A DNA stretch of 64,000 bases from Octopus sinensis (lineage: Eukaryota). Below are positions 927-64,000 of this stretch, one piece after another. The notes below the pieces were generated by a model. That model saw only the letters and a list, made by a program, of their open reading frames with translations, was not told the DNA's origin and made no database searches. The DNA is taken from NCBI RefSeq assembly GCF_006345805.1, contig NC_043003.1, positions 109,430,001-109,494,000 of the forward strand, given 5' to 3'. Made by a program: the position numbers and the translations under genes. Within the stretch, counting starts at the first letter, position 1; every line of letters begins with the position of its first letter.

Positions 927-1425
927 ACCGCCACCACCACCACCACCACCGCCACCACCACCGCCACCGCCACCACCGCCACCGCCACCACCACCACCAA
1001 CACCGCCACCGCCACCGCCACCGCCACGCCACCACCGCCACCGCCACCGCCACCACCACCACCGCCACCGCCACCGCCACCGCCGCCACCGCAACACCCA
1101 CCACCACACCGCCACCGCACCGCCACCGCCACCGCCACCGCCACCGCCGCCACCGCCAACGCCACCGCCGCCACCGCCCCACCGCCACCGCCACCGCCGC
1201 CACCGCCGCCACCACCACCACCGCCGCCACCGCCACCACCACCACCGCCACCACCGCGCCACCGCCACCACCACCACCGCCGCCACCGCCACCACCACCA
1301 CCAACCGCCGCCCCCGCACCACCACCCACCACCACCGCCCCGCACCACCAACCACCGCCGCCACCGCCACCACCACCACCACCACGCCCAGCCGCCACCG
1401 CCACCGCACCAACACCACCACCGCC

Positions 1426-1457
<32 letters not shown>

Positions 1458-8972: not shown

Positions 8973-9024
8973 ACAAAATCTGTTACTCTGAGTTTCTCGT
9001 TGCCGTTCATCAGACAGTTTTTGC
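8973..9024 (-). ncRNA. Type I hammerhead ribozyme-like motif
   Basis: GCAAAAACTGT-CTGATGA-ACGGCAACGA-GAAA-CTCAGAG-TA-ACAGATTTTGT. Stem I has 10 of 11 pairs, stem II is CG/CG with a GCAA loop, triplet GUA, A.A at 10.1/11.1. Confidence 0.65.
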
Positions 9025-17676: not shown

Positions 17677-19480
17677 CTGAAGAACAGTTCCAAAGTGTGT
17701 TCACTACACTCTAGGACAAGGCAAGTAAACAACCCAGAAGAATTCTTTTGCCACTTTACCAGCGACCAAAGAGACAAAAATTGAGTAATCAACATCGAAG
17801 AAGATGATATCACACTAGCCATTGATGAGATTGACACAAACTCAGCTGCTGGACCTGATGGATTCCCAGCGATCCTTCTCAAATCGTGCAAACGAGCCCT
17901 TGCAAAACCACTACAGCTTCTTTTTCAGAGCTTTCTTGCAAGTGGTAAGCTCCCAGTCAAACTGAAAGAGGGGGTTAATATGCCCCTATCCATAAGGGAG
18001 GTAGCAGAGCAGAAGATGCTAAAAATATAGGCCTATCTCTCTGACCTCACACATCGCAAAGTCATGGAACGAATAGTCCGTAAGAAACTAATCATGTTCC
18101 TTGAAGAAATGAAAAAAAACTTTACTGTCTGACACCCAGCATGGATTTCGACCAGGTAGAGGCTGCCTAACACAGCTCCTGCACACTATGACTGGGTGTT
18201 GAAACAGCTACTAAATGGCTCAATGTGGATGTAATATATCTTGACTTTGCAAAAGCCTTTGATAAAGTCGACCATGGTATGATCTGTCACAAACTGCGTG
18301 GTCTCGGCATAGGCGGGAAATTTGGAGAGTGGCTGCACAACTTCCTAAAAGACAGAAAACAGGCAGTTTTGAGCAATGGAGCCACCTCCAGGGAAACGCA
18401 AATAACAAGCGGTGTCCCACAGGGCACTGTCTTGGGGCCACTGATGTTCATAGTGGCCCTTTCAGACATGCCTTCAGTTGCTACGATGACCACCCTTGCT
18501 AGCTATGCAGATGACACAAAAGTCTCCCACGCAATACAAAACCCTGAAAATATTGCGCATCTGCAACATGAGCTGGACACAATATACAGGTGGGCTGAGG
18601 ACAACAACATGCATTTAATGCAGGTAAGTTCCAGGCCCTGCGCTACTGGCACACAAAGGTAAATGACGTGAAGACTGGATACACTGGCCCCGGAAGAATT
18701 GCAATCCCTGAGTCAAAATCAGGGCATGACACTGGCATTGACATGAGCAATGATCATCTTTCCAAATGCATATTGCTAATCTGGTGATAAAATCAGACGG
18801 CTAGCTGGATGGATTCTCCGAACTTTCAGAACAAGAGAGAAGGAGACACTGATGGTCCTATGGAAAACATTTGTCCTCAGCCCTTGGACTACTGCTCCAA
18901 ACTTTGGTCACCACACAATATAAAACAACAGCAGAACTCGAAGCAACTCAGAGAAGCTACACAAAGAAAATCGTCTCAATGCAAATGTCAGCTACTGGGA
19001 AAGACTGAAGGTATTAAACCTCTTCTCCCTGAGCGAGGCGGGAGAGATATGCAGTGATATACATCTGAAAATCCTGGAGGGTCTTGTCCCAAACTTTGGC
19101 ATTCAAGTTACTCCAACCGCAGAACGGGGCGCCGCTGCGTGGTGCCAAGGATTCCAACATCACCATCAAATACAGGTCCAGATACTGCAACAGCTTGGGT
19201 TCAGAGGACCACAGCTCTTTAAACATCCTCCCTAAATGCCTGAGAGACTTACATGGTGTGGATGTGGGTTTCTTTAAAACTAAACTGGATCTCTTCTTGT
19301 TGGGAGTCCAGATGAACCTACCTCACGACAGGAGACACGGATGCGGGCAGCAGCATCGAACTCCCTTGTTGATCAAGTGCCACGTATCAGAGGTGGTTTC
19401 ACAAACTAGTGTAGCTCATTCAGCGGTGGTGCCCCAGCATGGCCGCGGCTCTTCGGGCTAAAACATTTTTAGGATTTAAG
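17661..19480 (+). mobile_element. 5'-truncated CR1-like (CR1/L2 group) LINE, frameshifted reverse transcriptase
   Basis: AAGPDGFPAILLK, YLDFAKAFDKVDHG, SGVPQGTVLGPLMF, YADDTK, LDYCSKLWSP. The 3' tail is shared with 15680-16050. Confidence 0.9.
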
Positions 19481-22379: not shown

Positions 22380-22422
22380 CTGATGAATGCATTTCAAACT
22401 TGTTAGTTCTCTTCAGCAGCAG
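22380..22422 (-). ncRNA. Type I hammerhead-like motif (CpG-decayed)
   Basis: CTGCTG-CTGAAGA-GAACT-AACA-AGTTT-GAAA-TGCA-TT-CATCAG. Stem I has 5 of 6 pairs, stem II has 5 bp with G.U at 10.1/11.1, palindrome ATGCAT. Confidence 0.6.
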
Positions 22423-22870: not shown

Positions 22871-24134
22871 TAAATGCATATGTACGTATGTACATACTTG
22901 TGTACGTACCTAGATTCACATGACCAAATTAATAACACAATTTACCTAAATGTATGCATGAATTAACCACCCCCCATTCTTATAAACACAATGCTACACT
23001 AGTGACCAATATCACTGTAATACCACTTGACCATTGTATACTGATTAATGTAAGATAAATAACAACTTCAGCCTCTTAATAAGTATCGCTCACTGTGGGA
23101 TGAAAATGTAAAAAACATACGCTTATCTACACAAGTGATCCTAACACTGGCTTTAATACTTTCTTATTTCTTTATTGCCCACAAGGGGGCTAAACACAGA
23201 GGGGACAAACAAGGACAGACGAAGAGATTAAATCAATTACGTTGACCTCAGTGTGTAACTGGTACTTAATTTATTGACCCCCAAAAGGATGAAAGGCAAA
23301 GTCGACCTTGGCAAAATCTGAACTCAGAACATAATGACAAATGAAATACCGCTAAGCATTTTGCTCGGCGCATTAATGTGTCTGCCACAGGCTATCTGTT
23401 ATTTCATTAACCATTTATACGAAAAATACTCATCTATTATGTTTGTATTTGTGTATGTATCCTGGACTCTACAAGTGCTACAAGAATATTGGTCAGACCT
23501 AGTGAACCCCACCACAGAATCTGTGATTCATCATCAAGTGGTATCATACCACTAGCCACTTTTGGGTGTTGAGTTTAATTCACTGTGTGAATGTATGTGT
23601 ACCAAACCATGCGTGTGTGTATGCTTATAACTTTGTGTAAGTTTGTATGAGCAAGTGTACGTGCACCAGACAACATTAGTGAGGGCTTTTGTATATCCAT
23701 ATCCACTAAATGTTATATCTAATACGTTTTTTTTTTGCTATATTGTGTCTTTGTTTCTTTTTGCATCTGATATTCGTTATTGATCTTCTGTAATAATGAA
23801 GCTGTGTCCTTTAATTTGCTGTTTTTGTATAAACATACCAAGGAGAAATCTTGCGGAACGGACATTATTCTAACAAAGTACATCTTGTCACCTGAGGAGA
23901 CACATCTACACCAATGGATACACCTGAACAAGCTGTTCAATATCCCACCTGTGAGGAATGAATGCTAGATTGATCGAAACAATTGTAGTGAACAATAAAC
24001 ATTTTCATATCTTCCATCTTAGTCTCTCTCATTAATCAAATATATATGTATTTATATATACTCACATATATAGTTATATAAGCACACATATATATGTTTG
24101 TGTGTGTGTGTATAAATATAAATATATATATATA

Positions 24135-30450: not shown

Positions 30451-31206
30451 CTTAGCGAGTAAATAATATGTGGAAATTGACGATTTAAAAGTCTGTTATC
30501 AGCATATTGGCATTGAAATAATTTTCTTTAGCCCTTATTTATAAGTTGTATATATATATATATATTTATATATGTACCAAATGAAATCAAAAACAGCTAG
30601 CAGCAATGTATGTATGTATATACTCTTTACTCTTTTACTCTTTTACTTGTTTCAGGCATTTGACTGTGGCCATGCTGGAGCACCGCCTTTAGTCGAGCAA
30701 ATTGACCCCAGGACTTATTCTTTGTAAGCCCAGTACTTATTCTATTGGTCTCTTTTGCCGAACCGCTAAGTGACGGGGACATAAACACACCAGCATCGGT
30801 TGTCAAGCAATGCTAGGGGGACAAACAGACACACACACATACATATATATATATATACATATATACGACAGGCTTCTTTCAGTTTCCGTCTACCAAATCC
30901 ACTCACAATGCATTGGTCGGTGCGGGGCTATAGCAGAAGACACTTGCCCAAGATGCCATGCAGAGGGATTGAACCCGGAACCATGTGGTTGGTTAGCAAG
31001 CTACTTACCACACAGCCACTCCTGTGCCTATATATATATATATATGTGTACACAAGCTGTTTCGCATCATACCGAAGGAATTAGAAATGGCAGTCAAAGA
31101 CCGTTTTTTCCATTTCTATAAGTGGAGGTTCCAAAAACGAAGGCCCTTGCGGCTCACATACACAAAACCGGAGTGGCAAATACACGAATTCAGTCACTTA
31201 CCGTTA

Positions 31207-31268
31207 ATAGTGAACACGGTGTTTCTGGATCACAAACAGGGGAGTTTGAATTCTGTCATCAGCGCTAT
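31207..31268 (-). ncRNA. Type I hammerhead motif, tandem copy 1
   Basis: ATAGCG-CTGATGA-CAGAATTCAAACTCCCCTGTTTGTGATCCA-GAAA-CACCGTG-TT-CACTAT, with two CpG-type changes relative to copy 2. Confidence 0.65.
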
Positions 31269-31751
31269 ATTCGTTAGCTTTATCAAATGCCACCAGCCCT
31301 CACTTCTGACCCAGCGACATCAGATAGTGGGGGGAAGTGCGCAGATGTTAAAACCAAGTAACGACTGGGAACGTAAATTTTCCCTCCAAAATTCTGCCAT
31401 GCGCGCCTTCTGGGTAATCGTAATGGAATGAGGAATCCACATGGTAATACAATAAAAATGGTAAATAATTTTCCTGTGGTTTTTCATGTAACCAACAATT
31501 ATTTACCGGTAAATTTCGGTATGTAAATACGACAAAATAATTGTCAAGACCTTTGTAAGGTTCAGTATATAGTAAAGAAAAATAAGTTGGCTAGCAGCAA
31601 GCTGTTTCGCCTCATACCGAAGGAATTAGAAATGGCAGTCAAAGACCGTTTTTTCCATTTCTATAAGTGGAGGTTCCAAAAACGAAGGCCCTTGCGGCTC
31701 ACATACACAAAACCGGAGTGGCAAATACACGAATTCAGTCACTTACCGTTA

Positions 31752-31813
31752 ATAGCGAACACGGTGTTTCTGGATCACAAACAGGGGAGTTTGAATTCCG
31801 TCATCAGCGCTAT
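31752..31813 (-). ncRNA. Type I hammerhead motif, tandem copy 2
   Basis: ATAGCG-CTGATGA-CGGAATTCAAACTCCCCTGTTTGTGATCCA-GAAA-CACCGTG-TT-CGCTAT. Perfect 6-bp stem I, stem II GGA/TCC plus CAAAC/GTTTG, triplet GUU. Confidence 0.75.
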
Positions 31814-33711
31814 ATTCGTTAAATGGAAAAAACGGTCTTTGACTGCCATTTCTAATTCCTTCGGTATGAGGCGAAACAGCTTGCTGCTAGCCAACTTATT
31901 TTTCTTTACTATATACTGAACCTTACAAAGGTCTTGACAATTATTTTGTCGTATTTACATACCGAAATTTACCGGTAAATAATTGTTGGTTACATGAAAA
32001 ACCACAGGAAAATTATTTACCATTTTTATTGTATATGTGTACACACATATATTACACACCCACTACTACAAAACTATAAAATGTTCAAACTTCCCACAAC
32101 TGATTTGATTTGAAAAGCCCACTAGAATGGGAGCAAGCGCTAATCCGAAATCCGAATGATATGATATGATATATATGTAAAAAATGTAATATATAAATAA
32201 ATATCTACAAATATGAACCATCTGATCTGATTACCTCAATTTTTCTAATATATGTATATATATATATATATATATAATATATATATATATATAAATACAT
32301 ATATATATGTATATATATATATATATATATATAAACTCACTTCTATAAACGTCATCATCATTTAACGTCTGTTGTCCATGCTGGCATGGGTTGGACGTTT
32401 TGACCCAGGCTGGTAAGCTGAGTGGCTACACCAGAGTCCAGTCTGATTTGGCATGATTTCCACAACTGGATGCCCTTCCTAATGCCAACCACTCTGAGAG
32501 TGTGATGGGTGCTTTTACATGCCACCATCATGGATGTCAGTTGCATGATACCAGTGTCTGCCACAACTGTAATTTCACTTGGCTTGATGGGTCTTCTCAA
32601 GCAGAGCATAATGCCAAAGGTCTTGGTCATTGCCTCTCGATGGGAGTTGTCACAGATTTAAATTCCAGCTGTTGTTGGTACTCATTTTCATTTGAGTGGA
32701 TTAGAACTATGGGAAAATGAAGTGTCTTGCTCAAGGATACAATGCACTACTTGAATTAGAAAGCAAACTCATGAGCATACGATCATGAGCTCAGAACTGT
32801 AATCATTACACCATGCACCTGCTAGAGATAGCAGCCAAATTGCTCCATGGCTGCAATTTTAATGTCTTAGAAAAAAAAAAACCCAAAGGACTACATTGGA
32901 TAAAGTGATCATATGGCTGACCAGACTATCAGATGCTGTTATACATCGATGGTCACAATGCACTTTGCATTGTTTTAGCCATCAAATGATGCCACCCCAC
33001 TGGATAGGCGAGCAAGCCAATACTCCCCCTTCATCGAAAGGGGACTGGAGCAACATAAAATAAAGTGTTTTGCACAAGAACACAACGTGCTGCCTTGCCT
33101 GCAAATCGAACCCACAGTCTAGCGATCCTAACAATTAGGCCCCATGCCTTCACTTTGGATAAAGTAGTCTTGGAAATAAAGTAAGAAAATAGGGATGGTC
33201 ATGGGTGGATTGCCTTTAATTGTTGGCCAGATTAACCAAGTCTCATTAGGAGCGATACAAAAGCATTAACAGAAACTCTATAGTTTCTTTATATTGTTGT
33301 GTCATTTATTTCAGAGTGACCTGAGGAGAATCAGTGGAGTGTCAGACAAAAATGTCAGTGCAGCATTTAACGAAGTCCCTTTAGATTTTGAATTTAAACC
33401 TTGTAGAAGATGAGTTTGATTTTGATCCACTCAGAGCTGAGAAAATAAAATAAAGTATGATTTTTTTATTTCTTTATTGCCCACAAGAGGCTAAACACAG
33501 AGAGGACAAACAAGGACAGACAAATGGATTAAGTCGATTATATCGACCTCAGTGCGTAACTTGTACTTATTTAATCGACTCCGAAAGGATGAAAGGCAAA
33601 GTCGATCTCGGTGGAATTTGAACTCAGAACGTAGCAGCAGACGAAATACCGCTGAGCATTTCGCCCGGCATGCTAACGATTCTGCCAATTCGCAACCCTA
33701 TAAAATAAAGT

Positions 33712-36689: not shown

Positions 36690-36960
36690 TATACTTGCCA
36701 TCTCAATATGGCTAACCACTAAGGGTGGGTGTTACTGTAGCTTTTAGCCCCAGGAGATCATCGTCTCCACCTGGCTTTAGGCACACTTTCTGTGCTCCTA
36801 TGGTATTTGCAAAGGAAGGTCATCCTTCCCTCGTCAATCTAAGTGATATGCATGGACTGCAGTTTCTAGGTATTGACCTGTCCTCAGCGTACGACAATCA
36901 CCGGTTTTCGATGAAAGGAGTCCCAATGCAAATACTTATATCGTTTTTCCAGTAACTTAT
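36690..36960 (-). mobile_element. Short hammerhead-bearing interspersed repeat (family G), copy 2
   Basis: Homologous to 28440-28735. Confidence 0.75.
36844..36900 (-). ncRNA. Type I hammerhead ribozyme-like motif
   Basis: TGATtgtCGTACG-CTGAGGA-C-AGGT-CAAT-ACCT-A-GAAA-CTGCAG-TC-CATGCAtATCA. Full CUGANGA/GAAA core, triplet GUC. Confidence 0.7.
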
Positions 36961-42090: not shown

Positions 42091-42450
42091 ATATATATAT
42101 ATATAATATATATATATATATGAAAGAGTGTTGAAAAGTTCCTGACTCTTTGGGTATTATGAAATGCCAGGCTGGAGGCCCAACCTTCTGAGTTCTTTTA
42201 CAGGGCTTAGAAAAACTGAAGAACCACTGTGTAAGTGTGTGATTCTGAGAGGGGAATATGTTGGATAAAATCATAATTAACTGATCCTCCTGTATCTTCT
42301 TTTACCCAAAACCAGGAACTTTTCAGCGCCCCCTTGTACACACACACACACACATATATATACATACATGTGTATATATATCTGTCTATCTATATATATC
42401 TACTAAATAAATATAAAAAGCACTGGTGCTGGTGCCATGTAAAAGGCACT

Positions 42451-44899
42451 GGTGATGGTGCCACATAAAAAGAATTGGTGATGGTGCCACATAAAAAGAA
42501 TTGGTGATGGGCCACATAAAAAGAATTGGTGATGGTGCCCATAAAAAGAATTGGTGATGGTGTCACATAAAAAGAATTGGTGATGGTGCCACATAAAAAG
42601 AATGGTGATGGTGCCACATAAAAAGAATTGGTGATGGTGCCACATAAAAAGAATTGGTGATGGTGCCACATAAAAAGAATTGGTGATGGTGTGCCACATA
42701 AAAGAATTGGTGATGGTGCCACATAAAAAGAATTGGTGATGGTGCACATAAAAAGAATTGGTGATGGTGCCACATAAAAAGATTGGTGATGGTGCCACAT
42801 AAAAAGAATTGGTGATGGTGCCACATAAAAAGAATTGGTGATGGTGCCACATAAAAAGAATTGGTGATGGTGCCACATAAAAAGAATTGGTGATGGTGCC
42901 ACATAAAAAGAATTGGTTGATGGTGCCACATAAAAAGAATTGGTGATGGTGCCACATAAAAAGAATTGGTGATGGTGCCACATAAAAAGAATTGGTGATG
43001 GTGCCACATAAAAAGAATTGGTGATGGTGCCACATAAAAAGAATTGGTGATGGTGCCACATAAAAGAATTGGTGATGGTGCCACATAAAAAGATTGGTGA
43101 TGGTGCCACATAAAAAGAATTGGTGATGGTGCCACATAAAAAGATTGGTGATGTGCCACATAAAAAGAATTGGTGATGGTGCCACATAAAAAGAATGGTG
43201 ATGGTGCCACATAAAAAGAATTGGTGATGGTGCCACATAAAAAGAATTGGTGTGATGGTGCCACATAAAAAGAATGGTGATGGTGCCACATAAAAAGAAA
43301 TTGGATGGTTGCCACATAAAAAGAATTGGTGATGGTGCCACATAAAAAGAATTGGTGATGGTGCCACATAAAAAGAATTGGTGATGGTGCCACATAAAAA
43401 GAATTGGTGTGATGGTGCCACATAAAAAGAATGGTGATGGTGCCACATAAAAAGAATTGGTGATGGTGCCACATAAAAGAATTGGTGATGGTGCCACATA
43501 AAAAGAATTGGTGATGGTGCCACATAAAAAGAATTGGTGATGGTGCCACATAAAAAGAATTGGTGATGGTGCCACATAAAAAGAATTGGTGATGGTGCCA
43601 CATAAAAGAATTGGTGATGGTGCCACATAAAAAGAATTGGTGATGGTGCCACATAAAAAGAATTGGTGATGGTGCCACATAAAAGAATTGGTGATGGGCC
43701 ACATAAAAAGAATTGGTGATGGTGCCACATAAAAAGAATTGGTGATGGTGCCACATAAAAGAATTGGTGATGGTGCCACATAAAAAGAATTGGTGATGGT
43801 GCCACATAAAAAGAATTGGTGATGGTGCCACAAAAAAGAATTGGTGATGGTGCCACATAAAAAGAATTGGTGATGGTGCCACTAAAAAGAATTGGTGATG
43901 GTGCCACATAAAAGAATTGGTGATGGTGCCACATAAAAAGAATTGGTGATGGTGCCACATAAAAAGAATTGGTGATGGTGCCACATAAAAAGAATTGGTG
44001 ATGGTGCCACATAAAAAGAATTGGTGATGGTGCCACATAAAAAGAATTGGTGATGGTGCCACATAAAAAGAATTGGTGATGGTGCCACATAAAAAGAATT
44101 GGTGATGGTGCCACATAAAAAGAATTGGTGGTGGTGCCACATAAAAAGAATTGGTGATGGTTGCCACATAAAAAGAATTGGTGATGGTGCCACATAAAAA
44201 GAATGGTGATGGTGCCACATAAAAAGAATTGGTGATGGTGCCACAAAAAAGAATTGGTGATGGTGCCACATAAAAAGAATTGGTGATGGTGCCACATAAA
44301 AAGAATTGGTGATGGTGCCACATAAAAAGATTGGTGATGGTGCCACATAAAAAGAATTGGTGATGGTGCCACATAAAAAGAATTGGTGATGAATTGATGG
44401 GTGCCACATAAAAAGAATTGGTGATGGTGCCACATAAAAAGAATTTGTGGTGGTGCCACATAAAAAGAATTGGTGGTGGTGCCACATAAAAAGAATTGGT
44501 GATGGTGCCACATAAAAAGAATTGGTGATGGTGCCACATAAAAAGAATTGGTGATGGTGCCACATAAAAAGAATTGGTGATGGTGCCACATAAAAAGAAT
44601 TGGTGATGGTGCCACATAAAAAGAATTTGTGGTGGTGCCACATAAAAAGAATTGGTGGTGGTGCCACATAAAAAGAATTGGTGATGGTGCCACATAAAAA
44701 GAATTGGTGATGGTGCCACATAAAAAGAATTGGTGATGGTGCCACATAAAAAGAATTTGTGGTGGTGCCACATAAAAAGAATTGGTGATGGTGCCACATA
44801 AAAAGAATTGGTGATGGTGCCACATAAAAAGAATTGGTGATGGTGCCACATAAAAAGAATTTGTGGTGGTGCCACATAAAAAGAATTGGTGGTGGTGCC
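42451..44899 (+). repeat. 26-bp minisatellite (GGTGATGGTGCCACATAAAAAGAATT), about 94 copies, inside an RTE 3' UTR
   Basis: Highly homogeneous tandem array. Preceded by GGTGCTGGTGCCATGTAAAAGGCAC and followed directly by the RTE tail (44900-45055). Confidence 0.95.
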
Positions 44900-54779: not shown

Positions 54780-54887
54780 TTCGTCTGTTAAATCAAAATA
54801 AAACTTTCCTGGGTATTTTTTTGCTACGAGATAATATCGTGATCGACTATTTGGGATACCAAACTGTAGTGGGGTGAATATGAACTC
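54780..54887 (-). CDS. TRDMT1: TRDMT1/DNMT2 coding exon (motif VIII)
   Basis: ctgcag|GAG...GAA|gtaagt. Reads EFIFTPLQFGIPNSRSRYYLVAKKYPGKFYFDLTDE, 108 bp. Confidence 0.93.
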
Positions 54888-56797
54888 CTGCAGAACAGAA
54901 AGATTGAGAGGAGAGTGAATCATTTATATCATCATTATCATTATCATAATCATCATTCAGTGTTTTAAATCCGAGTTTTGTCCCCGTTAATGGGAGTGAA
55001 CGGATCTATCTCAATTCAATAGCAACCAAGGTAGGCAGGTGCAACCAACCCCAACCTTTGGGCTGGCTGGTGCCCATTCTCCTTTGCTATCATGAGGCTT
55101 TTTTGGAGCTGGATTTTCAACAGGGAGCATGCCCTTGTTTACCCATAACCAAGTTTCTAGACATGAGTGGTCCCAAGACCAAAGCCTCTATCATGATTTT
55201 TAAGAAATGTAGTAGAAAACTAGCTCAGGAAAGCAGGGATGCTACTCCCTGAGACCCCTTTTGGAGACCCCCTACCTATAGTTGGAATTTACAAAAAAAC
55301 AAAAGACAAAGACAGGTGTGTAAACAACAAATAGGTGTATTAGTTTAACGCTCGGTAAGGTAAGAAAGTCTTTTATGTTTCAAGACTACACTCTTCAACA
55401 GAAAGAAACATGAGAAAATAAACAGAGAGAGAATAGAAAAAGCTTTAATGGCTAGCGGTCGATCATGGCAATGGCCGGACAGAGGTAGTCAGACAGGAGA
55501 GCTAGGAAGAAGGGGAGATAATAAAGTAGTGGTAATCCCAAAATGAAGGTGTGCGTGTGTGTTTGTGAGAGTGTGTATATGCATGTAGATAGAGGCTGGT
55601 GACATTGATGTGTGGGTGTGTAAATGTGTAGGTGTGTGGATGATGGTGTGGGTGCTGGGAAGTGGTCAGTGCTAGTATGTGCGGGGTGGTGTGATAGGGT
55701 GTGGTGGTGTGGGTGCTGGGAAGTGGTCAATGCTAGTGTGTGCAGAGTGGTGCAATGTAGTGTGGTGTGTTGTGTTGTGGTGTGTTGGTGTGGTGATGTG
55801 TTATATGTTGTGTTGTGGTGTGTGGTGCGGTGTGGCATGATGTGGTGTGGTATAATAATCAAATGAATAATGACAGACAATGAATGATTGTCAGCTCTTT
55901 ACAGCTGTTTCTTATGCACTTTTTTAAATAGAAGAATGAGAAAACTACTTCACTGCAAAAAAACCATAATCATCAGATGAAGCAGTTTCGAAAACAAAAT
56001 ATATTCCAAGAATACAGCAGGGATGTGGCTGAATTCTGTTGAGGCTTATCGTGCTAAATACCCATAGGGTTGTTGTTCTCTGCATACACAACTAGAATAT
56101 CCTACTTGATACTTATCAACCGTAGGCAGTGACCACGGGTTCATCTAACCCTACAAAGACAAAGGGTGACACAACTTGGCACCAGTGATGCTGTAACACA
56201 TTTCTACAGCTGAGTGAAGTAGAGCAATGTGAAAGAAAGTGTCTTGTTCAAGAACACAACATGAACACGGTCTGGGAATTGAATATATATATATAAATGG
56301 CGGTGCCCCAGCATGGCCACAGCTTTGAGCTGAAACTAGATAAAATAAAAAAAAAGATAAAATAAAATATATAAAACATAGATATGTATATTAAAGGTGT
56401 CCACAAAATCTTCAGACAATTTCAAAAGGCCATCACAAAAAATTTAGAAGAGGTGGCAACTAAATTTTTGCTGCATATAAAGATGCTATTATCAAACTTA
56501 ATATTAATGTTATGTATTCAAGTCTCAGACTGCAATTAATGTTGTAATTTTAATAAACATTTTTTTCTGTCTAATGACTTTGTGTACACCCTGACGAGTA
56601 GATGGACAGCCAACAACTGATGAAGGGTCGTTCTTTATGTTACTTGTCCTGTTTTCCATTTGTTTCTCTCGTTTGCGTATGCAACTCTTTTGTTTTTATA
56701 TTTCATGTTGTTTATGGTTTGTGACGTCCTGTACCCATATATGCATATATATGTGTGTATGTGTATACATATACATTATTTATATTATTATATATTC

Positions 56798-56835
<38 letters not shown>

Positions 56836-56884
56836 ATTGTAAAGAATGGAGCTGAACGAAGATTTAACCAAATTCCTTTATTTT

Positions 56885-56970
56885 ATTTTCGACATATGTT
56901 TCGAAGTCTGCAAAGTCCCTAATTCCGATTGAATAAGGAGTCCATTTTGCAGCTTTCTCTTCAGGAAAAT
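56885..56970 (-). ncRNA. Core-perfect type I hammerhead ribozyme motif, intronic, sense to TRDMT1
   Basis: ATTTTC-CTGAAGA-G[AAAG-CTGCAAA...TTTGCAG-ACTT]C-GAAA-CATATG-TC-GAAAAT. G10.1-C11.1, triplet GUC, predicted cut between 56891 and 56890. Confidence 0.8.
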
Positions 56971-57060
56971 CCAGGAACTTAATTCTCCAACAAAATGCAC
57001 AACAAGCTTTTCGACAAACGCTCACGAGGAGCCCATGGAATAAATGGCACAAAATGTCTA

Positions 57061-57105
<45 letters not shown>

Positions 57106-57423
57106 ATTAAATTAGAGATAAAACCACTATTAGGCAACTCAAGCAATTAATTATAATTAATTATACTGTGAAATTTGATTTAATCCTAAATCTAATTTTT
57201 CCCTGTAAATTTGGATATAATCCCTAATATTATTATATATATATATATATATACATATACACACACACATATATATAAGAAAAGAAGGAAAAATCTACCA
57301 TAAAGATATATTCCTTGTTGAAAATTGTCCATGAATAACAATATAAAAAATTGATCAAATATTATCATAGAAAATAAACAAAAACAACAACAGTAACAAC
57401 AACAGCAATAAATTATTATTGCA

Positions 57424-57464
<41 letters not shown>

Positions 57465-57489
57465 CAATGCTGTTGAAAGAAGAGCTCAC

Positions 57490-57601
57490 CTGATATTTGT
57501 AATTACAGGCCTTGAGAGTCTTCAGAAAAAGATGTCTTGTTTCTGACACTTCAAACCCTTTGACATTTTCCAGCAGCATCAACGAGGGTGGACACTTCAT
57601 C
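57490..57601 (-). CDS. TRDMT1: TRDMT1/DNMT2 coding exon (motif VI, ENV)
   Basis: ttccag|G-ATG...CAG|gtgagc. Reads MKCPPSLMLLENVKGFEVSETRHLFLKTLKACNYKYQ, 112 bp. Upstream exons were not located. Confidence 0.93.
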
Positions 57602-57834
57602 CTGGAATAGGTGAAGGATTAATATTAACGACAAGAAAGTTGGCATCTGAGAGAAAGAGTTCTAATTAAGGTTTGCTCCAGTGGATCAGAGAGATTCTTT
57701 TGGCAGTTATTAGAATTAAAAAGAAAAAAAAAGATTATTTTTAATTGTCCAAGAAATTGTATCAGATGAGAGAAACAGCTATGAGTGTTTGGACGAAGAA
57801 GAGAATAAATAGCAGAAGTATTAACAATAGCATC

Positions 57835-58029
57835 AGCTGTAGTAGTAGTATTAGTAGTAGTAGTAGTAGTAGTTAGTATTAGTAGTAGCAGTAATAGTGG
57901 TGGTGGTGGTTAGTATTAGTAGTAGTAGTAGTGGTGGTGGTGGCAGTAGAAGTAGTAGTGGTGGTGGTGGTGGTGGTAGTAGTAGTGGTGGTGGTGGTAG
58001 TAGTGGTGGTGGTAGTAGTGGTGGTGGTG

Positions 58030-58070
<41 letters not shown>

Positions 58071-58233
58071 GGTGGTGGTGGTGGTAGTAGTAGTAGTGGT
58101 GGTGGTGGTGGTAGTAGTAGTGGTGGTGGTGGTAGTAGTGGTGGTGGTAGTAGTAGTGGTGGTGGTGGTGGTGGTGGTAGTAGTAGTAGTGGTGGTGGTG
58201 GTGGTGGTGGTGGTGGTGGTGGTAGTAGTAGTA
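57835..58233. repeat. (GTA/GTG)n microsatellite
   Basis: Direct reading of the sequence. Confidence 0.95.
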
Positions 58234-58480
58234 ACTGAGCAGAAATATTGTTCTACTTGTGGAGTGTTCAATGTAGCAACTAAGATTTATGAAGTTCACA
58301 ACTTTTAAGACAAAAATCAAATGCATAAATCACATTAATCCCCAGTAGCTTATTCATTAGCCTAACCCCATGAGTGACAGAAGCATATTTATTACATTAT
58401 CTTCAGCACATATGTAAGTGTCTGTCTGCCTGCTTCTCTCTAGACCAATGATTCTGAAACAGGGTCCATATAAGACTTTT

Positions 58481-59430
58481 CGCTATATATAGCGACTTTG
58501 GCTTAGTTATCAGCCTCAAGAAGAAGACCAACATCATGGGTTAGGCTATATCGGACATCCTAAACATACATATTGGAGACCACAGACTACAGGAGGTGGA
58601 GAAGTTTACCTATCTTGGCTCTACTGTCACCTACAACCTATCCCTTGATACTGAGCTCAATATACGCATTGGCAAGGCAGCTGCTGCGATGGCCCAACTC
58701 TCCAAACGGGCTTGGGACAACAATAAGCTGACCAAGACCACAAAAATGAAGATTTACCGGGCATGTGTGCTTAGCACTCTACTGTACAGAAGTAAGACTT
58801 GGATGCCATACATGCGCCAAGAGTGTCGCCTAAATATCTTTCACCTGTGCTGCCTCCGGAAAATCCTTGGCATCAAATGACAGAATCATGTCCCCAACAA
58901 AGATGTCCTCAAGCAAGCAGGAATACCAAGCATGTTTGCACTCCTCACACAAACACGTATGAGATGGCTTGGACATGTTAGCCGTATGGAAGATGGCAAA
59001 ATCCTCAAGGACATACTCTACGGAGAGCTTGCTAGGGGCACTAGGTCTGTGGGAAGACCGTTCTTACGATACGAGGATGTTTGCAAAAGGGACATGAAGG
59101 CCTGCAACATCAATATTAGCAACTGGGAAGCAGTTACCAGCAACCGTGGAGATTGGCGCCGTACCGTAAAAGAGGGAATACAAAGGAGTGACAGAGAGAG
59201 AGAGGAGAAATGGAAAGACAAGAAAAGACGTCAACAAGAAACTATGACACAACAACCAGCCAGGCAAGGTCTTCGCTACGTTTGCGGCACCTGCCAGAGG
59301 GAGTGTTTGTCCAGGATAGGACTACACAGCCACAGCAGGAGATGTATTAGGACATGAAATGTAAAAGCTGGACTAGATTATTTTATGTGCAACTCCATTG
59401 TCTCCCGAGACAAAATGGATGCCAACAACA
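58481..59430 (+). mobile_element. 5'-truncated RTE-clade (BovB-like) LINE
   Basis: EKFTYLGS, RIGKAAAAM, CVLSTLLY, MRWLGHVSRMEDG, GRPFLRYEDVCKRD and C-terminal C-x2-C-x12-H-x3-C. 3' end CCATTGTCTCCCGAGAC...GCCAACAACA. Confidence 0.9.
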
Positions 59431-59466
59431 ATATGTAGGTGTCTGTCTGCCTGCTTCTCTCTAGAG

Positions 59467-59810
59467 CAGGGATTCTCAACCAGGGTCCATAAGACTTTTG
59501 GGGTCCACATAACAAAAAAATAAATAAATAAATTGGGGATCCATAACAGCATTTTAAGAGTCTCTGAAAAAAAAAATCCATGCTTTAGATGTACGTATTG
59601 GTATGTATTGCAAGAAACAGCTGGGCTTCCTTCTCTAACATTTTACATAGTTTAACTTACACAAGTGAACAAGTGTAAAGCAAAATCGAAATTTTGAAAG
59701 AAGTGTCTATAAAACTAGCATTTAAGCTTTGTATGGCTATGGAGGTCCACCAGAATAAAATAGTAATCAAAAGGGGTCCATAGATAAAGAAATAGTGGAG
59801 AATCCCTTCT
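59467..59810. mobile_element. hAT-like MITE
   Basis: CAGGGATTCTCAAC / GTGGAGAATCCCT termini. Related to 14832-15097. Confidence 0.65.
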
Positions 59811-61577
59811 TGCTAAAAAAAAAAAATCTTGTTCACAATCTTCAAAGTCAACATGGAGCCTGAAGTTTATAGAGAAGACAGACTGGAGCATTCATGCAGA
59901 CTGGGTTATACAGTATAGAATCTTCCAATGACACTGAAAACCTTTGTCGCTCCATTAAGGTGGAACTTAATGGATATGGCAGAGTTTTCACAAAGGGATC
60001 AAATTGACACATCATGACAAAAGACTGTAAGTGTTATGTCACCTTGGAGAACAGCACTTGCTGTACAGTAGTTGCTGGAGTGAAGTAAAGCCATTGCTTA
60101 TTTCCCAAATGGGCAGAGATCAGAAATGAGATAACTTCATATTCTGAGCACTGTATGTTTTGGGTGTTGCATGTTTCTATAATACATCAAATTTGCTCCC
60201 CTATTTCAATGATATTGCAGTCTACTTTAGCTTCTCATACAGGTGCTTAATCTTATTATGTATATAGGAGCAGGTGTGGCTGAGTGGTAAGAAGTTTGCT
60301 TCCCAACCACATGGTTTTGGGTTCAGTCCTCCTGCATGACATCTTGGGCAAGTATCTTTTACTATATTCCAGGCTGACCTAAGCCCTGCAGGTTGATTTG
60401 GTAGACAGAAACTGAAAGAAGCCGGTCGTGTGTACACACACACACACACATGTATATATATGCAGATATCTATGTATGAGTGTCTTTCTGTTTGTGTTTG
60501 ACCTCCCTCCTTCATGCCACTTGACAATAGGTGTTGGTGTGTTTATGTCCCTGTAACTTTGCAGTTCAGCAAAGAGACTGATAGAATAAGTACCAGGTTA
60601 AAAGAAGAAGAAAAGCATAAGTACTGGGGTTGATTTGTTTGACAAAAAATTCTTCAACGCGGTGCCCCAGCATGGCCACATTCTAATGACAGAAACAGGT
60701 AAAAAGATAAAAGGTATATATATTTCATCATATGTGGTAAGTAGCCTGCTTACGAACCACTGGTTCCAGGTTCAGTCCCACTGCATGGCATCTTGGGCAA
60801 GTGTCTTCTACTATAGCTTCGGGCTGACCAAAGCCCTTTGAGGGGATTTGGTAGACGGAAACTGAAAGAAGCCCATCATATATATGTATATGTTTGTGTT
60901 TGTCCTCCCAACATCGCTTGACAACCGATGCTGGTGTGTTTACATCCCCATAACTTAGCGGTTCAGCAAAAGAGACCGATAGAATAAGTGCTAGGCTTAC
61001 AAAGACTAAGTCCTGGGGTCAATTTGCTCAACTAAAGGTGGTGCTCCAGCATGGCCACAGTCAAATGACTGAAACAAATAAAAGAGTAAAAATATATTTC
61101 ATCCTACTGAACCACCTTTTTTTTTCTCTCTCCATTTTTTCCCACTCAATCCTTTTTGCCAAAGGGCAAAGGCTCGAAACATCAAAGATTTTCCCATTCT
61201 TCCCAAGTGTCAAACTAATATGCCTGTTTGTTGTTCCTACATTTGTCTTTATCCTTTGTCTTTTGTAAAACTGAAACATGTATGTATGTGTGTGTGTGTG
61301 TGTGTGCGTGTGAAGGGGTGTGGCCCAGTGGTTAGGTTTTTGCATTCATGATTATATAATCGTGGGTTCAATTCCAAGACCAGGCAATACAATGTGCTCT
61401 CGAGCAAAACACTTCATTTCACATTGCTGCAGTCCACCTTTTGATCTGGGAGGAATGTTGATCCACTCACTTAGCCATCACGGTGGCTTCATTGAAAGGC
61501 CAGAACAAAGCATTGTGACTGGTGATGTGTAACAATATCTGATAGTTTAGTCTTTCACATGATACATATATATATAT

Positions 61578-61879
61578 CACCGTGACCGACCAGACTATCA
61601 GATGTTGCTACACATCGCTGGTCACAATGCGCTTCGCAGTGTTTTAGCCTTCAAATGACGCCACACCACTGGTTAAGCAAGCAGGCCAACAGAAGAAAGA
61701 GTGAGATAAAGTTGTGGTAAAAGAGTACAGCAGGGACCGTCACCACCCCCTGCCAGAGCCTCATGGAGCTTTAGGTGTTTTCGCTCAATAAGCACTCACA
61801 ACGCCCGGTCTGGGAATCGAAACCGCAATCCTATGATCGCGAGTCCGCTGCCCTAACCACTGGGCCATTGCGCCTCCAC
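61578..61879 (-). mobile_element. tRNA-headed SINE family D
   Basis: Minus-strand head GTGGAGGCGCAATGGCCCAGTGGTTAGGGCAGCGGACT...GGTTTCGATTCC. The tail also occurs at about 32905-33010. Confidence 0.75.
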
Positions 61880-62925
61880 TATATATATATATACATAACA
61901 GAGATATACTTGCATAGTAAGTGTTTTGATCGGCAATCACTTACTGAAATTAAAGCGATTGCAGCTGGAAGATGTAAGTTACCCACTCGGAAACACACAA
62001 AAACTGCCAACTTCACTTAAACATCTATTTGTAACACTGTTAAAATTTTCTTCATTCAAAACTGTGACCAGTTCACCTGACAAAAGATACAGCAAAACTT
62101 TTTACCTGTGAACAGGTTGCAGTTTTGAACAATGAAAAAAGTCTGACACTAAATTACAAATAGATGTTTAACTGAAGCTTACTGTTTCCATGTGGTTCTG
62201 AATTGCTAACTTGTGTCTTCCATACTACAATTGCTAAATACACACACACACACAAACACACAGAGTTGAGGAGTTTAGGTCAAGTTAACCAAAGCTAATA
62301 GAGGTATGCAGTCAGAGTGCTCCAGTTGACAAGCCACTAGAATCCCAGTTCAAACAGGGGCTGGAGCTGAAGCTGGGGTAGAACAAATGTCCAGGTGGGA
62401 GAGAACTGGCAATCAGTATCTTACCTTTGAGTCCCTAGAAATAGGTTAAATAAGAGCAAAACAATTAATCAAGGCAGGACTATGACATTTAGATTTGTTT
62501 AGTTTAATTGAAGAGAGTTAATGGTAATGCAATGTAGGTAGAATTAATATAGTCTCTTACAGCTGCTTCTGGGATATCCCAGGTACTGGATTATCCTATT
62601 GATCCAAGGTTCCATATACTGGGATTTCCATCATCAGAGAAATATAAGAAATATAAGTGGGAAATTATAGGCAGGAACATTTGTTGTAAAAAATGATTAG
62701 CGCAGCAGAAAGTTCATGGCTTGTTATAGCTTATTGTGTTCTGGAAGAAGACAGGGGGTTTATTCAGACCCACACAAAAGAGTTCTTCCTAATGTACATT
62801 CCTAGGTAAGTCTATTGTTCAAAATAAAGGTTGAGTAATGTATCCAATAGAGAGAAGCAAAAAAAATAGCGCTAAGAAGTTTGAAAGTCCATGTGATGTG
62901 TGTGTGTGTGTGTATGTGTTTAGGA

Positions 62926-63712
62926 TAGGGGTCACCAAACTATGGCCCATAGGCCGGATCTGTACTGTGAGGTTATTTCATCCAGCCTGCCACTGTACTG
63001 TACCTTTTGTGTAAATACCTGTAATGGGAGTTCATTTGCCTCTGGTATGGCATCAGTTCTTGGAACAACTTATGTCTGTGAGCAAACATTTTCAAAAAGG
63101 AAGAACGTGAAGTCAACACATTGAACGAGGTTAACTGAGGAAACTTTGAAAGGAATTCTCTTGGTTGCATGCAGCAATTCCAAAGCAAATACTGATTATA
63201 TCTTAAAAGCTAGACACCAGTTCCACAAGTCTCACATTTTTGCTGCTCAGTTTGTGAGATTTGGATATGTGTGCACTGGGTGTGACATGACTATCACATC
63301 GTTAACGCTGCCTTCTTTGATAACTTTTTGGCTGTCTTTATTTTTTATTACGGAGATGTACTTGCATAGCGAGTGACTTGATCTGAGATTGTGTGCTGGA
63401 ATGAAAACAATTGCAGCGTGGAAGGTGTTTATAAGCCATTTAAGAAACACACAAAACTTCATGCAGCACGAAGTTTTGTCAGTGAACAGGTCGCGGTCTC
63501 AAAGCGACGAAAATATTTTGACAAATTAAATTTAAATGTTGAAGTGAATCTAACGGTTTTGTGTGTTTCTAAAATGGCTTATAAACACCTTCCATCTGCA
63601 ATTGTTTATTTTTTGTGTATTCACTGTATTGTATTGAACAAAATGGGTATACGGCCCACGTTTGTCAATCACTCAGTTATTTGGCCCACCATGAAAAGTT
63701 TGGTGACCCCTG
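62926..63712 (+). mobile_element. Non-autonomous hAT element with transposase C-terminal remnant
   Basis: TIRs TAGGGGTCACCAAACT / AGTTTGGTGACCCCTG. Perfect 8-bp TSD GTTTAGGA (62918-62925 and 63713-63720). LGTTYVCEQTFS...RLTEETL dimerisation-domain remnant. Confidence 0.9.
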
Positions 63713-64000
63713 GTTTAGGAGAACAAAAGAACATAATAATTCACTTCATGAGTATTAAATAACTTCTTCTTTTTTATCATTAAACAAGCAGAAAGTTACA
63801 AAAGTGACCCAAAGGTCAAAAGCACAAGACTTTCTGCCAATTAAAAAACAATAATAATAACATATATATATATATTCATGTGTGTGTGCGTGCGTGCGTT
63901 TGTGTATGCTGTTAGTCTATGAATCTGTTATTGTAGATGCAAAGGGTTTATTCCTTAATGGCCTCTGCAAATTATCTCCTACAAACAACAAAACTAATGA

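What the first reader, a model, noticed from the sequence alone, without database searches (positions are those of the whole stretch)
56885..56970. Core-perfect hammerhead in sense orientation inside a TRDMT1 intron
Seen: all conserved nucleotides are present (CUGAAGA, G10.1-C11.1, GAAA, GUC). Stem I is a perfect 6 bp, extendable by TTCCT/AGGAA. Stem II is long (CTGCAAA/TTTGCAG, TCCTTA/TAGGGA) and stem III is palindromic ACATATGT. It lies in a TA-flanked insert between exons 57490-57601 and 54780-54887. Established: palindromic short-stem-III hammerheads work best as dimers, and intronic hammerheads occur in vertebrate genes. Inference: TRDMT1 pre-mRNA could be cut at 56891/56890, either weakly in cis or by pairing in trans with transcripts of other family copies.
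Basis: partly seen in the sequence, partly recalled or inferred. Interest (0 to 1): 0.75.

Follow-up and report, generated by a model that had tools for sequence, protein, structure and literature searches.

The report
Hammerhead ribozyme copy inside TRDMT1 intron
The sequence is a genuine, core-perfect hammerhead self-cleaving RNA motif lying in sense inside a TRDMT1 intron, but it is one of about eight such motifs scattered over this 64 kb, so it is most likely an ordinary relic of a mobile element, not a gene-specific switch.

Summary
Observation confirmed. On the minus strand, 56970-56885 reads stem I (6 bp), CUGAAGA, a 55-nt helix II closed by G10.1-C11.1, GAA, helix III ACAUAUGU, C17 and stem I. 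The cleavage site is 56891|56890. It lies in sense in the phase-0 intron between two DNMT2/TRDMT1 exons.

It is not a chance match. A descriptor finds only this site, against about 1e-4 expected per window.

It is not alone. A model built from it finds a diverged copy at 62643-62552 (E about 2e-4, 11 of 24 pairs changed on both sides). Further copies are at 55982-55894 (same intron), 31813 and 31268 (a young 545-nt partial tandem with an inverted copy, like a retrozyme or Penelope-like element) and 22422. There are three weaker candidates. Helix III is palindromic in nearly all. Rfam detects none of them.

Best reading: one copy of an abundant, retroelement-borne type-I hammerhead family of the metazoan dimer-type class, with an unusually long helix II. 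Cleavage of TRDMT1 pre-mRNA is possible but unshown and probably weak:
- the monomer fold is disfavoured (P about 5e-4);
- helix III is 2 bp plus a tetraloop;
- neighbouring copies cannot pair with it.

No cephalopod sequence was reachable, so conservation is untested. Interest is moderate.

The parts
56885..56970 (-). Hammerhead motif A (the finding), type I, 86 nt. Parts: stem I 56970-56965 / 56890-56885; core CUGAAGA 56964-56958; helix II 56957-56903; G12-A14 56902-56900; helix III ACAUAUGU 56899-56892; C17 56891; predicted scissile bond 56891|56890.
   Evidence: Read directly. It is the only descriptor hit in the window, with 0 hits in 300 shuffles and about 1.3e-4 expected per window. No Rfam hit.
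56866..56984 (-). Extended three-way junction. The closing helix of stem I is AAUUAAGUUCCU (56984-56973) paired with AGGAAUUUGGUU (56877-56866), beyond an internal loop GG / AAAAUAA.
   Evidence: MFE fold of 56985-56860: -28.7 kcal/mol, z = -2.3.
56838..57064 (-). 227-bp unique stretch that carries motif A, lying between two (TA)n arrays. It may be an old insertion into a microsatellite.
   Evidence: TRF arrays at 56737-56831 and 57065-57104. There is no other copy of the stretch in the window and no internal duplication. The ORF through it has no protein homologue. Microsatellite flanks are common here.
57490..57601 (-). TRDMT1/DNMT2 exon (motif VI, ENVKGF), upstream of the intron that holds motifs A and C.
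   Evidence: Translation and splice sites; PDB 1G55 DNMT2, E 2e-18; tblastn with PF00145 proteins.
54780..54887 (-). TRDMT1/DNMT2 exon (motif VIII, QFGIPNSRSRYY), downstream of the 2,602-nt phase-0 intron 54888-57489.
62552..62643 (-). Motif B, a diverged family copy with the same long-helix-II architecture. It has CUGAUGA, U10.1-A11.1, GAA and helix III GCAGCUGU, with G instead of A at 15.1, so it is probably dead. The triplet is GUA and stem I is 5 bp. It probably lies in the preceding TRDMT1 intron.
   Evidence: Model R1, built from A alone: 28.1 bits, E about 2e-4 over 64 kb; the next hit scores 15.7 bits. 11 of 24 pairs are changed on both sides and 93.8% of cells are paired; slid controls give <=2. 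Apical similarity AUGGA..CCUU..UCAAUnGGA, p about 0.025. No N-terminal DNMT2 exon lies in 57602-64000.
55894..55982 (-). Motif C, in the same intron as A, with its cleavage site 991 nt downstream. It has CUGAUGA, a 58-nt helix II, GAAA, helix III ACAGCUGU and triplet GUA. Stem I is weak (4 of 6 pairs, with an A.A mismatch).
   Evidence: Model R2: 16.4 bits, E 0.28. Sequence read. Its 3' half is nearly identical to that of B. On its own it is not significant.
31752..31813 (-). Motif D1, a compact relative. It reads AUAGCG|CUGAUGA|C-GGA..UCC-A|GAA|ACACCGUGU|U|CGCUAU, with a perfect 6-bp stem I. It sits inside a young repeat structure.
   Evidence: R2: 22.7 bits, E about 0.009. Also a relaxed-descriptor hit. 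Repeat structure.
31207..31268 (-). Motif D2, a tandem twin of D1 lying 545 nt downstream, with two substitutions.
   Evidence: 224-nt direct repeat, 99% identical.
22380..22422 (-). Motif E, a compact relative. It reads CUGCUG|CUGAAGA|GAACU-AACA-AGUUU|GAA|AUGCAU|U|CAUCAG. Helix III is a loop-less palindrome, so it can form only in a dimer.
   Evidence: Relaxed-descriptor hit: 4 hits observed against 0.085 expected. Sequence read.

Best explanation
**What it is.** Motif A is a real hammerhead ribozyme motif by descent. It is one copy of an abundant, old and diverged family of type-I hammerheads in this genome.

**Class.** The family belongs to the metazoan class carried by non-autonomous retroelements: non-LTR retrozymes and the terminal repeats of Penelope-like elements. 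In that class helix III is very short and palindromic. The ribozyme's job is to cut multimeric element transcripts into unit-length RNAs. Cleavage goes by in-line attack of the 2'-OH of residue 17, which leaves a 2',3'-cyclic phosphate and a 5'-OH.

**How this copy differs.** Copy A keeps every catalytic residue. It has a lineage-specific long helix II: 3 bp, a 2x2 internal loop where loop 2 normally sits, then a 7-bp helix and an apical hairpin.

**Likely effect at this locus.** A happens to lie in sense in a TRDMT1 intron. It has no tandem partner and no compatible neighbour. When the intron is transcribed I expect at most slow, low-yield self-cleavage at 56891|56890 and no appreciable effect on TRDMT1 mRNA.

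**Shown:** the motif, its non-chance status, the existence and covariation of relatives, the palindromic helix III, and the gene context.

**Inferred:** the retroelement origin, weak activity, and absence of a host function.
For: **Complete core with optimal choices**
- GUC triplet, G10.1-C11.1 and C15.2-G16.2.

**Not a chance match**
- It is the only strict-descriptor hit in the window.
- About 1.3e-4 hits are expected per window.

**Relatives exist**
- B scores E about 2e-4 with a model built from A alone.
- A and B differ on both sides at 11 of 24 pairs, yet 93.8% of cells stay paired.
- Across five copies, 15 of 24 pairs change on both sides and 89% of cells are paired. Slid controls give 3-8.
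- A relaxed descriptor finds 4 sites against 0.085 expected.

**Palindromic helix III**
- It is an exact palindrome in A, C, E, F and H, and nearly so in B, D and G.
- Those inner letters are unpaired in my models, so this is independent evidence. It is also the hallmark of the dimer-type metazoan class (PMC4209133; PMC3088659).
- A's helix III (2 bp plus a tetraloop) matches the type described as 'similar to invertebrate HHRs' (PMC7229834).

**A young hammerhead-bearing element nearby**
- At 31053-32034 there are 99% identical direct repeats 545 nt apart, each with a hammerhead.
- It also has a 100% identical 214-nt inverted copy and abuts (TA)n.
- This is the partial-tandem plus inverted-copy layout, with microsatellite targeting, described for Penelope-like elements (PMC8557442).

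**Activity likely weak**
- P(hammerhead fold) is about 5e-4 for A, against 1e-2 for the young copy D1.
- The A x A helix III duplex is -7.0 kcal/mol; A x B and A x C are -1.9 and -1.6.
- Changing the length of stem II by even one pair lowered activity in tested hammerheads (PMC3088659).
Against: - No Rfam hammerhead model reports any of these motifs, even at E<=10.
- No flank homology links A to B, C or D, so a shared mobile element is inferred only from the ribozyme part.
- No reverse transcriptase or GIY-YIG gene of a Penelope-like element is in the window. The one RT fragment, at 18225-18659(+), is LINE-like.
- The covariation counts come from alignments fitted to the structure, on sequences picked by that structure.
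- Seven of the eight candidates are on the gene's strand. Random insertion does not predict that (two-sided p about 0.07).
- Three related copies lie within 6.7 kb, in two adjacent introns of one gene.
- Nearest-neighbour folding ignores core and tertiary energies, so the activity forecast is soft.
- Mussel retrozyme hammerheads were reported to cleave co-transcriptionally at about 0.1 per min (PMC7229834).
Confidence: 0.62

Rival explanations
1. One reading: a working intronic ribozyme that matters to the host. A cuts nascent TRDMT1 pre-mRNA at 56891|56890, alone or paired with other copies, and so lowers or tunes TRDMT1 expression.
For: - Sense orientation and a perfect core.
- Strong helices I and II, including a 12-bp closing helix.
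- Two further related motifs (B, C) on the same strand in the same and the preceding intron.
- A strand bias of 7 to 1.
- Precedent of active, conserved intronic hammerheads in RECK and C10orf118 (PMC3088659).
Against: - There is no conservation or expression evidence of any kind; none could be obtained.
- The monomer fold is disfavoured.
- Helix III is weak, unlike the conserved amniote intronic hammerheads.
- B has G at 15.1 and C has a poor stem I.
- Heterodimer helices with B and C are -1.9 and -1.6 kcal/mol, and the stem I strands do not match.
- The motif density across the window, including outside the gene, argues for incidental insertion.
- From my own knowledge, not checked here: splicing tolerates slow ribozyme cleavage within introns, because the exons stay tethered to the polymerase.
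- Retrozymes are under-represented in Xenopus introns (bioRxiv 10.64898/2026.07.22.740005).
Confidence: 0.12
2. Chance resemblance: an AT-rich imperfect hairpin whose internal loop happens to spell the hammerhead core.
For: - Rfam models do not report it.
- A loose version of the motif is expected about once per Gb of single strand, so a scan of a whole Gb-sized genome would meet a few.
- Stable hairpins are common in this microsatellite-rich window: 11% of 55-nt stretches fold at or below -13.9 kcal/mol.
- The MFE z-score is only -2.3.
Against: - The per-window expectation is 1e-4 or less.
- The window holds 4 relaxed-descriptor hits against 0.085 expected.
- A second copy is found by a model of A at E about 2e-4, with 11 compensatory pairs.
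- The recurring palindromic helix III is not encoded in the models.
Confidence: 0.04
3. A structured intronic hairpin that is used for something other than cleavage, for example as a double-stranded substrate for RNA editing or a small-RNA precursor. The hammerhead core would then be a fossil with no activity.
For: - The 126-nt region folds into long helices.
- The lowest-energy fold buries part of the core.
- Copies B and C are visibly decayed.
Against: - No microRNA or other Rfam family matches the site; the mir-297-type hits nearby are microsatellites.
- Nothing points to such a role.
- The core of A is fully intact, which a pure hairpin function does not explain.
Confidence: 0.04

Closest known systems
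Type-I hammerheads of metazoan non-LTR retrozymes and satellite-like repeats (Schistosoma, newt and axolotl, mussel, coral; PMC7229834, PMC4209133)
   Same: - Type-I topology and a full core.
- A 6-bp helix I followed by an internal loop and a closing stem.
- Helix III of 1-2 bp capped by a palindromic tetraloop.
- AT-rich dispersed copies.
- A tandem pair exists nearby (D1/D2, 545 nt apart).
   Different: - Helix II is 55-61 nt in A, B and C, instead of about 4 bp plus a loop.
- An internal loop sits where loop 2 would make the tertiary contact.
- A is solitary, not in a tandem array.
- The conserved loop 1 / loop 2 nucleotides cannot be recognised.
- Rfam models do not report it.
Hammerheads in the terminal repeats of Penelope-like elements (min-HHR; PMC4209133, PMC8557442)
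   Same: - Helix II is longer than usual.
- Helix III is palindromic or absent, with predicted dimeric action and low activity in vitro.
- Sequence varies greatly between copies within one genome.
- Insertion next to (TA)n; a partial tandem plus an inverted copy is seen at the D element.
- D1 and B have an odd nucleotide or pair at 10.1/11.1, reminiscent of the extra base between positions 9 and 10.1.
   Different: - No Penelope-like RT/GIY-YIG coding sequence is in the window.
- A has a regular G10.1-C11.1 and no extra base.
- Helix I of A is 6 bp, not 4-5 bp.
- Helix II is far longer than 7-8 bp.
Conserved intronic hammerheads of amniotes (HH9 in RECK, HH10 in C10orf118; PMC3088659)
   Same: A type-I hammerhead in the sense orientation inside an intron of a protein-coding gene.
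   Different: - Those are conserved across mammals, and in birds for RECK. They are active as single motifs and are stabilised by tertiary contacts or a pseudoknot.
- Here conservation is untested, helix III is weak, and the motif is one of many in the region.

Membership tests
Hammerhead ribozyme (type I) | Conserved core: C3 U4 G5 A6 N7 G8 A9, G12 A13 A14, and residue 17 not G | tested here: met
   CUGAAGA, GAA and C17 read directly on the minus strand. The descriptor hits the site.
Hammerhead ribozyme (type I) | Three helices around the core with stem I open; A15.1-U16.1 and 10.1-11.1 paired | tested here: met
   - Stem I is 6 bp.
- Helix II starts G-C, A-U, A-U.
- Helix III is A-U, C-G plus AUAU.
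- The helices are kept through double changes in relatives.
Hammerhead ribozyme (type I) | Match to the curated Rfam hammerhead covariance models | tested here: not met
   - No hammerhead hit at the gathering score.
- None at E<=10 in a 601-nt search.
- The same holds for copy D1.
- This is a detection criterion, not a structural one. The 55-nt helix II is the likely cause.
Hammerhead ribozyme (type I) | Tertiary contact between stem I loop and loop 2 that gives fast cleavage at physiological Mg2+ | tested here: inconclusive
   Internal loops lie at the right distances: 6 bp up stem I and 3 bp up helix II. No known contact motif can be recognised from sequence.
Hammerhead ribozyme (type I) | Site-specific self-cleavage giving a 2',3'-cyclic phosphate and a 5'-OH | not testable with these tools
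   Only folding estimates are available: the hammerhead-compatible fold is 3.3 kcal/mol above the MFE, P about 5e-4.
Non-LTR retrozyme | Tandem repeats of about 170-400 nt, each with a hammerhead, so that unit-length RNA can be excised | tested here: not met
   - For A: no tandem or internal duplication, and no second copy of the 227-bp stretch in the window.
- The feature is met in spirit only by the separate D element, which has two hammerheads 545 nt apart.
Penelope-like element terminal repeat | Hammerhead within a repeat that flanks an RT plus GIY-YIG reading frame | tested here: not met
   - Six-frame reading of the intron shows no such frame.
- The only RT fragment in the window is LINE-like and far away.
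Penelope-like element terminal repeat | Insertion into microsatellites such as (TA)n | tested here: inconclusive
   A and the D element both abut (TA)n. However, 31% of the window lies within 100 nt of such an array.
Conserved host intronic hammerhead (HH9/HH10 kind) | Presence at the orthologous intron across distant species | not testable with these tools
   - No cephalopod or other mollusc sequence was reachable.
- The protein search returned three distant intron-less fragments.
- Two metagenome scans found nothing.
TRDMT1 / DNMT2 (host gene) | Motifs VI and VIII, the CFT motif, and motifs IX and X in order on one strand | tested here: met
   (1G55, E 2e-18).

The most novel reading that the evidence does not exclude
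The long-helix-II hammerheads B, A and C are not random relics. On this reading they are a lineage-specific set kept in sense orientation in consecutive TRDMT1 introns. They would act co-transcriptionally on the pre-mRNA of an RNA methyltransferase. More broadly, this genome would carry hundreds of thousands of hammerheads of a variant that current Rfam models miss, with a sense-strand bias in genes.
Probability: 0.06. Interest if true: 0.75.

Novelty: new member of a known kind. Interest (0 to 1): 0.42.

Why it matters
For TRDMT1 itself it probably matters little. A weak, solitary ribozyme in a 2.6-kb intron is unlikely to change expression.

The wider point is more useful. This window carries about one hammerhead-like motif per 8 kb, and one element among them looks very recent. 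None is reported by Rfam. If that density holds genome-wide, this (reportedly cephalopod) genome hosts a large, partly active family of ribozyme-bearing retroelements. It would include a variant with a 55-61-nt helix II.

That would extend the known range of retrozyme and Penelope-type hammerheads to a group for which I found no report. It would also give a natural test of how much helix II can be extended without losing activity. Finally, it cautions annotators that model-based scans under-count these motifs.

Tried and rejected
1. **Rfam.** Searched at the gathering score and at E<=10, over the whole window and locally. No hammerhead was listed; at E<=10 over the whole window only the best 150 of 219 matches are shown. 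The nearby mir-297, mir-1277 and mir-3149 hits are microsatellite artefacts.
2. **blastn of the insert against the window.** Only (TA)n matches came back. My first query wrongly included the repeat and flooded the output.
3. **Looking for cephalopod orthologues.**
   - The two-exon peptide found only three distant PF00145 fragments, which are intron-less at this position.
   - The 66-aa ORF through the insert found nothing.
   - Two metagenome pattern scans found nothing. Conservation could therefore not be tested.
4. **Supplementary consensus sequences of Naiad elements.** These are not held.
5. **Internal duplication of the insert as a sign of a former tandem.** Not significant.
6. **Penelope-like coding remnants in the intron.** None were seen. 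One Pfam call on a DNA reference failed because of stop codons.
7. **Flank homology between A, B and C.** None was found.
8. **A double hammerhead between A and its neighbours.** Rejected on helix III energies and mismatched stem I.
9. **tRNA-like SINE heads by ARAGORN.** None were called.
10. **Literature on hammerheads in cephalopods.** Nothing specific turned up.
11. **One paper search failed.** A term had more than four words.

Full report
**1. The observation**

On the minus strand, 56970-56885 reads AUUUUC | CUGAAGA | G-A-A AG CUGCAAA AUGGAC UCCUUA UUCAAUCGGAAU UAGGGA C UUUGCAG AC U-U-C | GAA | ACAUAUGU | C | GAAAAU.
- the 11 invariant core residues;
- G10.1-C11.1, A15.1-U16.1 and C15.2-G16.2;
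- a GUC triplet and a perfect 6-bp stem I;
- the palindromic ACAUAUGU.

C17 is base 56891, so the predicted scissile bond is 56891|56890, as stated. It is a 12-bp closing helix beyond a GG/AAAAUAA internal loop.

**2. Gene context**

- The exons 57490-57601 and 54780-54887 (minus strand) have AG/GT borders.
- Their translation joins in phase 0.
- It aligns without gaps to residues 112-169 of human DNMT2 (1G55, E 2e-18).
- The CFT motif, motif IX, and motif X with the stop codon follow on the same strand at about 53.5, 51.4 and 38.6 kb.

The motif is therefore in sense inside a 2,602-nt TRDMT1 intron, 519 nt from its 5' splice site. I could not verify the organism.

**3. Is it chance?**

- A type-I descriptor (stem I >=5, helix II >=3 with G-C, helix III >=2, helix II up to 70 nt) finds this site and no other on either strand. 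It found nothing in 300 Markov shuffles.
- A 400-Mb simulation gives about 1 hit per Gb of single strand, or 1.3e-4 per window, for stem I >=6. None of 134 chance cores had a helix II as stable as the observed -13.9 kcal/mol.
- The real window is rich in hairpin-forming microsatellites: 11% of 55-nt stretches fold that well. The helix II bonus is therefore smaller than the simulation suggests.
- A whole-genome scan could still meet a chance case or two. That is why relatives matter.

**4. Relatives**

Rfam reports no hammerhead for the site, even at E<=10, and lists none among the matches shown for the whole window. blastn finds no second copy of the 227-bp stretch.

*Copy B.*
- A covariance model built from A alone, run without filters, gives one clear outlier: 62643-62552 on the same strand. 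It scores 28.1 bits (E about 2e-4), and the next hit scores 15.7 bits.
- B has CUGAUGA, the same helix II plan (3 bp, internal loop, 7-bp helix, apical hairpin), GAA, helix III GCAGCUGU, a GUA triplet and a 5-bp stem I.
- A and B are 57% identical. Even so, 93.8% of pair cells are standard pairs and 11 of 24 pairs differ on both sides. With the partners slid, the count is 0-2.
- Their apical sequences share AUGGA..CCUU..UCAAUnGGA in register (p about 0.025).
- B has G at 15.1 and is probably dead.

*Copies D1, D2 and C.* A model of A plus B then finds:
- D1 at 31813-31752 (E about 0.009);
- its twin D2 at 31268-31207;
- C at 55982-55894, in the same intron as A (E 0.28).

C is not significant alone, but its 3' half is nearly identical to that of B.

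*Copy E and the weaker candidates.*
- A relaxed descriptor gives four hits (B, A, D1 and a new one, E, at 22422-22380) against 0.085 expected.
- A five-sequence model adds three weak candidates with full cores: F 23887-23993 (+), G 9019-8978 (-) and H 36893-36849 (-).

*Family-level evidence.*
- Across the five aligned copies, 89% of cells pair and 15 of 24 pairs change on both sides. Slid controls give 3-8.
- These alignments are fitted to the structure, so the counts lean towards it.
- Independent of the models, helix III is an exact palindrome in A, C, E, F and H and nearly so in B, D and G. The inner four letters of the 8-mers are unpaired in the models, and each has a 1 in 16 chance of being self-complementary.

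**5. What kind of hammerhead**

The literature describes canonical metazoan type-I hammerheads as follows:
- helix I of 6 bp;
- helix II of 4 bp;
- helix III of 1-2 bp capped by a 2-4-nt palindromic loop.

They work as dimers when copies are in tandem. Penelope-like elements carry variants with a larger helix II and low activity in vitro (PMC4209133; also PMC3088659). A helix III of two pairs plus a tetraloop is called 'similar to invertebrate HHRs' (PMC7229834).

A fits this class in helices I and III and in the core. It departs in helix II.

**6. The D element**

The D element (31053-32034) shows what a fresh insertion of such a family looks like here:
- two 224-nt direct repeats, 99% identical and 545 nt apart, each starting with a hammerhead;
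- a 214-nt inverted copy, 100% identical;
- (TA)n at the end.

This is the partial-tandem plus inverted-copy layout, with microsatellite targeting, reported for Penelope-like elements (PMC8557442). Two ribozymes 545 nt apart could release a unit-length RNA, as retrozymes do.

A is also bounded by (TA)n. With 142 alternating arrays in the window this is weak evidence.

No Penelope-like coding sequence is present. The one RT fragment is LINE-like.

**7. How A is likely to behave**

- The fold that keeps the core free and the three helices formed is 3.3 kcal/mol above the MFE, with ensemble probability about 5e-4.
- The competitor is a UUCGA/UCGAA hairpin that buries C11.1-G12-A13 and U16.1-C17-G1.1.
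- The young copy D1 scores 1e-2 on the same measure, B scores 1e-8, and E can form helix III only as a dimer.
- The monomeric helix III hairpin of A costs +2.4 kcal/mol.
- An A x A helix III duplex is -7.0 kcal/mol, which I convert to a Kd near 10 uM.
- A x C and A x B duplexes are -1.6 and -1.9 kcal/mol, and their stem I strands differ. The copies on the same transcript therefore cannot complete a double hammerhead with A.
- Changing the length of stem II reduced activity in tested hammerheads (PMC3088659). That is a warning for a 55-nt helix II.
- These energy models ignore core and tertiary interactions, so slow cleavage remains possible.
- From my own knowledge, not checked here: splicing tolerates slow ribozyme cuts within introns.

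**8. Verdict**

It is a hammerhead in sense in the intron, and family copies exist. A meaningful cut of TRDMT1 pre-mRNA is unshown and unlikely.
- The best reading is an ordinary relic copy, with an intact core, of an abundant retroelement-borne hammerhead family.
- It is a new member of a known kind, with an unusually long helix II shared by at least two copies.

Conservation in other species could not be tested. The protein and metagenome searches reached no related animal sequence. I found no paper on hammerheads in cephalopods.

**9. Unexplained**

- Seven of the eight candidates lie on the minus strand, which is the gene's strand. A SINE core sequence occurs 4 times on each strand.
- Three related long-helix-II copies sit within 6.7 kb.

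With so few independent events (two-sided p about 0.07) I do not build on either point.

Noticed in passing
window 31053-32034: A very young composite repeat. It has two 224-nt direct repeats (99% identical, 545 nt apart), each beginning with a compact hammerhead (D1 31813-31752, D2 31268-31207; predicted cuts after 31758 and 31213). It also has a 214-nt inverted copy (31447-31660 against 31821-32034, 100% identical) and ends at (TA)n. The layout resembles a retrozyme or a non-autonomous Penelope-like element, and it could give a 545-nt circular RNA.
   Followed up: partly
window 22380-22422 (-): Compact hammerhead-like motif E. It has CUGAAGA, a 5-bp helix II with an AACA loop, GAA, and a loop-less palindromic helix III AUGCAU that can form only in a dimer. 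The triplet is AUU. It lies about 60 nt downstream of a (TGTA)n array.
   Followed up: partly
window 23887-23993 (+), 8978-9019 (-), 36849-36893 (-): Three weak model hits (E 0.25-0.85) that still have full cores and palindromic or near-palindromic helix III: ACAAUUGU, ACUCAGAGU and ACUGCAGU. F is the only candidate on the plus strand, and it has a 77-nt helix II.
   Followed up: partly
window, all hammerhead-like motifs: Seven of the eight candidates are on the minus strand, while a SINE core occurs 4 times on each strand. The helix III 8-mers are all of the form A-CA-NN-UG-U with a self-complementary NN (UA, GC, AU), or ACUGCAGU.
   Followed up: partly
window 4960, 5478, 24890, 30926, 46089, 46320, 52802, 60795: Eight copies of a repeat core GGGCAAGTGTCTTCTRCTATAGCC (0 expected by chance). 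I take them to be a tRNA-derived SINE, often next to TA/TG microsatellites. From memory it resembles an abundant octopus SINE; that was not tested. ARAGORN calls no tRNA.
   Followed up: partly
window 42413-44899: A minisatellite of 96 copies of the 26-bp unit ATAAAAAGAATTGGTGATGGTGCCAC (94% matches). It lies inside the TRDMT1 span and gives spurious ORFs of up to 890 aa in several frames.
   Followed up: no
window 235-2136 and about 57854-58329: Long degenerate trinucleotide arrays. The first is (CCA)n, 1.9 kb. The second translates as runs of P/L, H/Y and T. Both give long stop-free ORFs on both strands.
   Followed up: no
window 18225-18659 (+): A reverse-transcriptase fragment (Pfam RVT_1, E 4e-16). 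Its nearest solved structures are R2 and LINE-1 ORF2p, so it is a LINE-like relic, not a Penelope-like element.
   Followed up: partly
whole window: 142 alternating purine-pyrimidine microsatellite arrays cover 8.6% of the window. They account for about 200 sub-threshold Rfam 'microRNA' matches (mir-297, mir-1277, mir-3149, mir-466), which are artefacts.
   Followed up: yes
window 56886-56894 and 57008-57016: The 9-mer UGUCGAAAA (minus-strand reading), which spans the cleavage triplet and the stem I 3' strand, recurs 122 nt upstream within the same insert. The rest of the insert shows no duplication (p 0.09), so it is probably a coincidence.
   Followed up: yes
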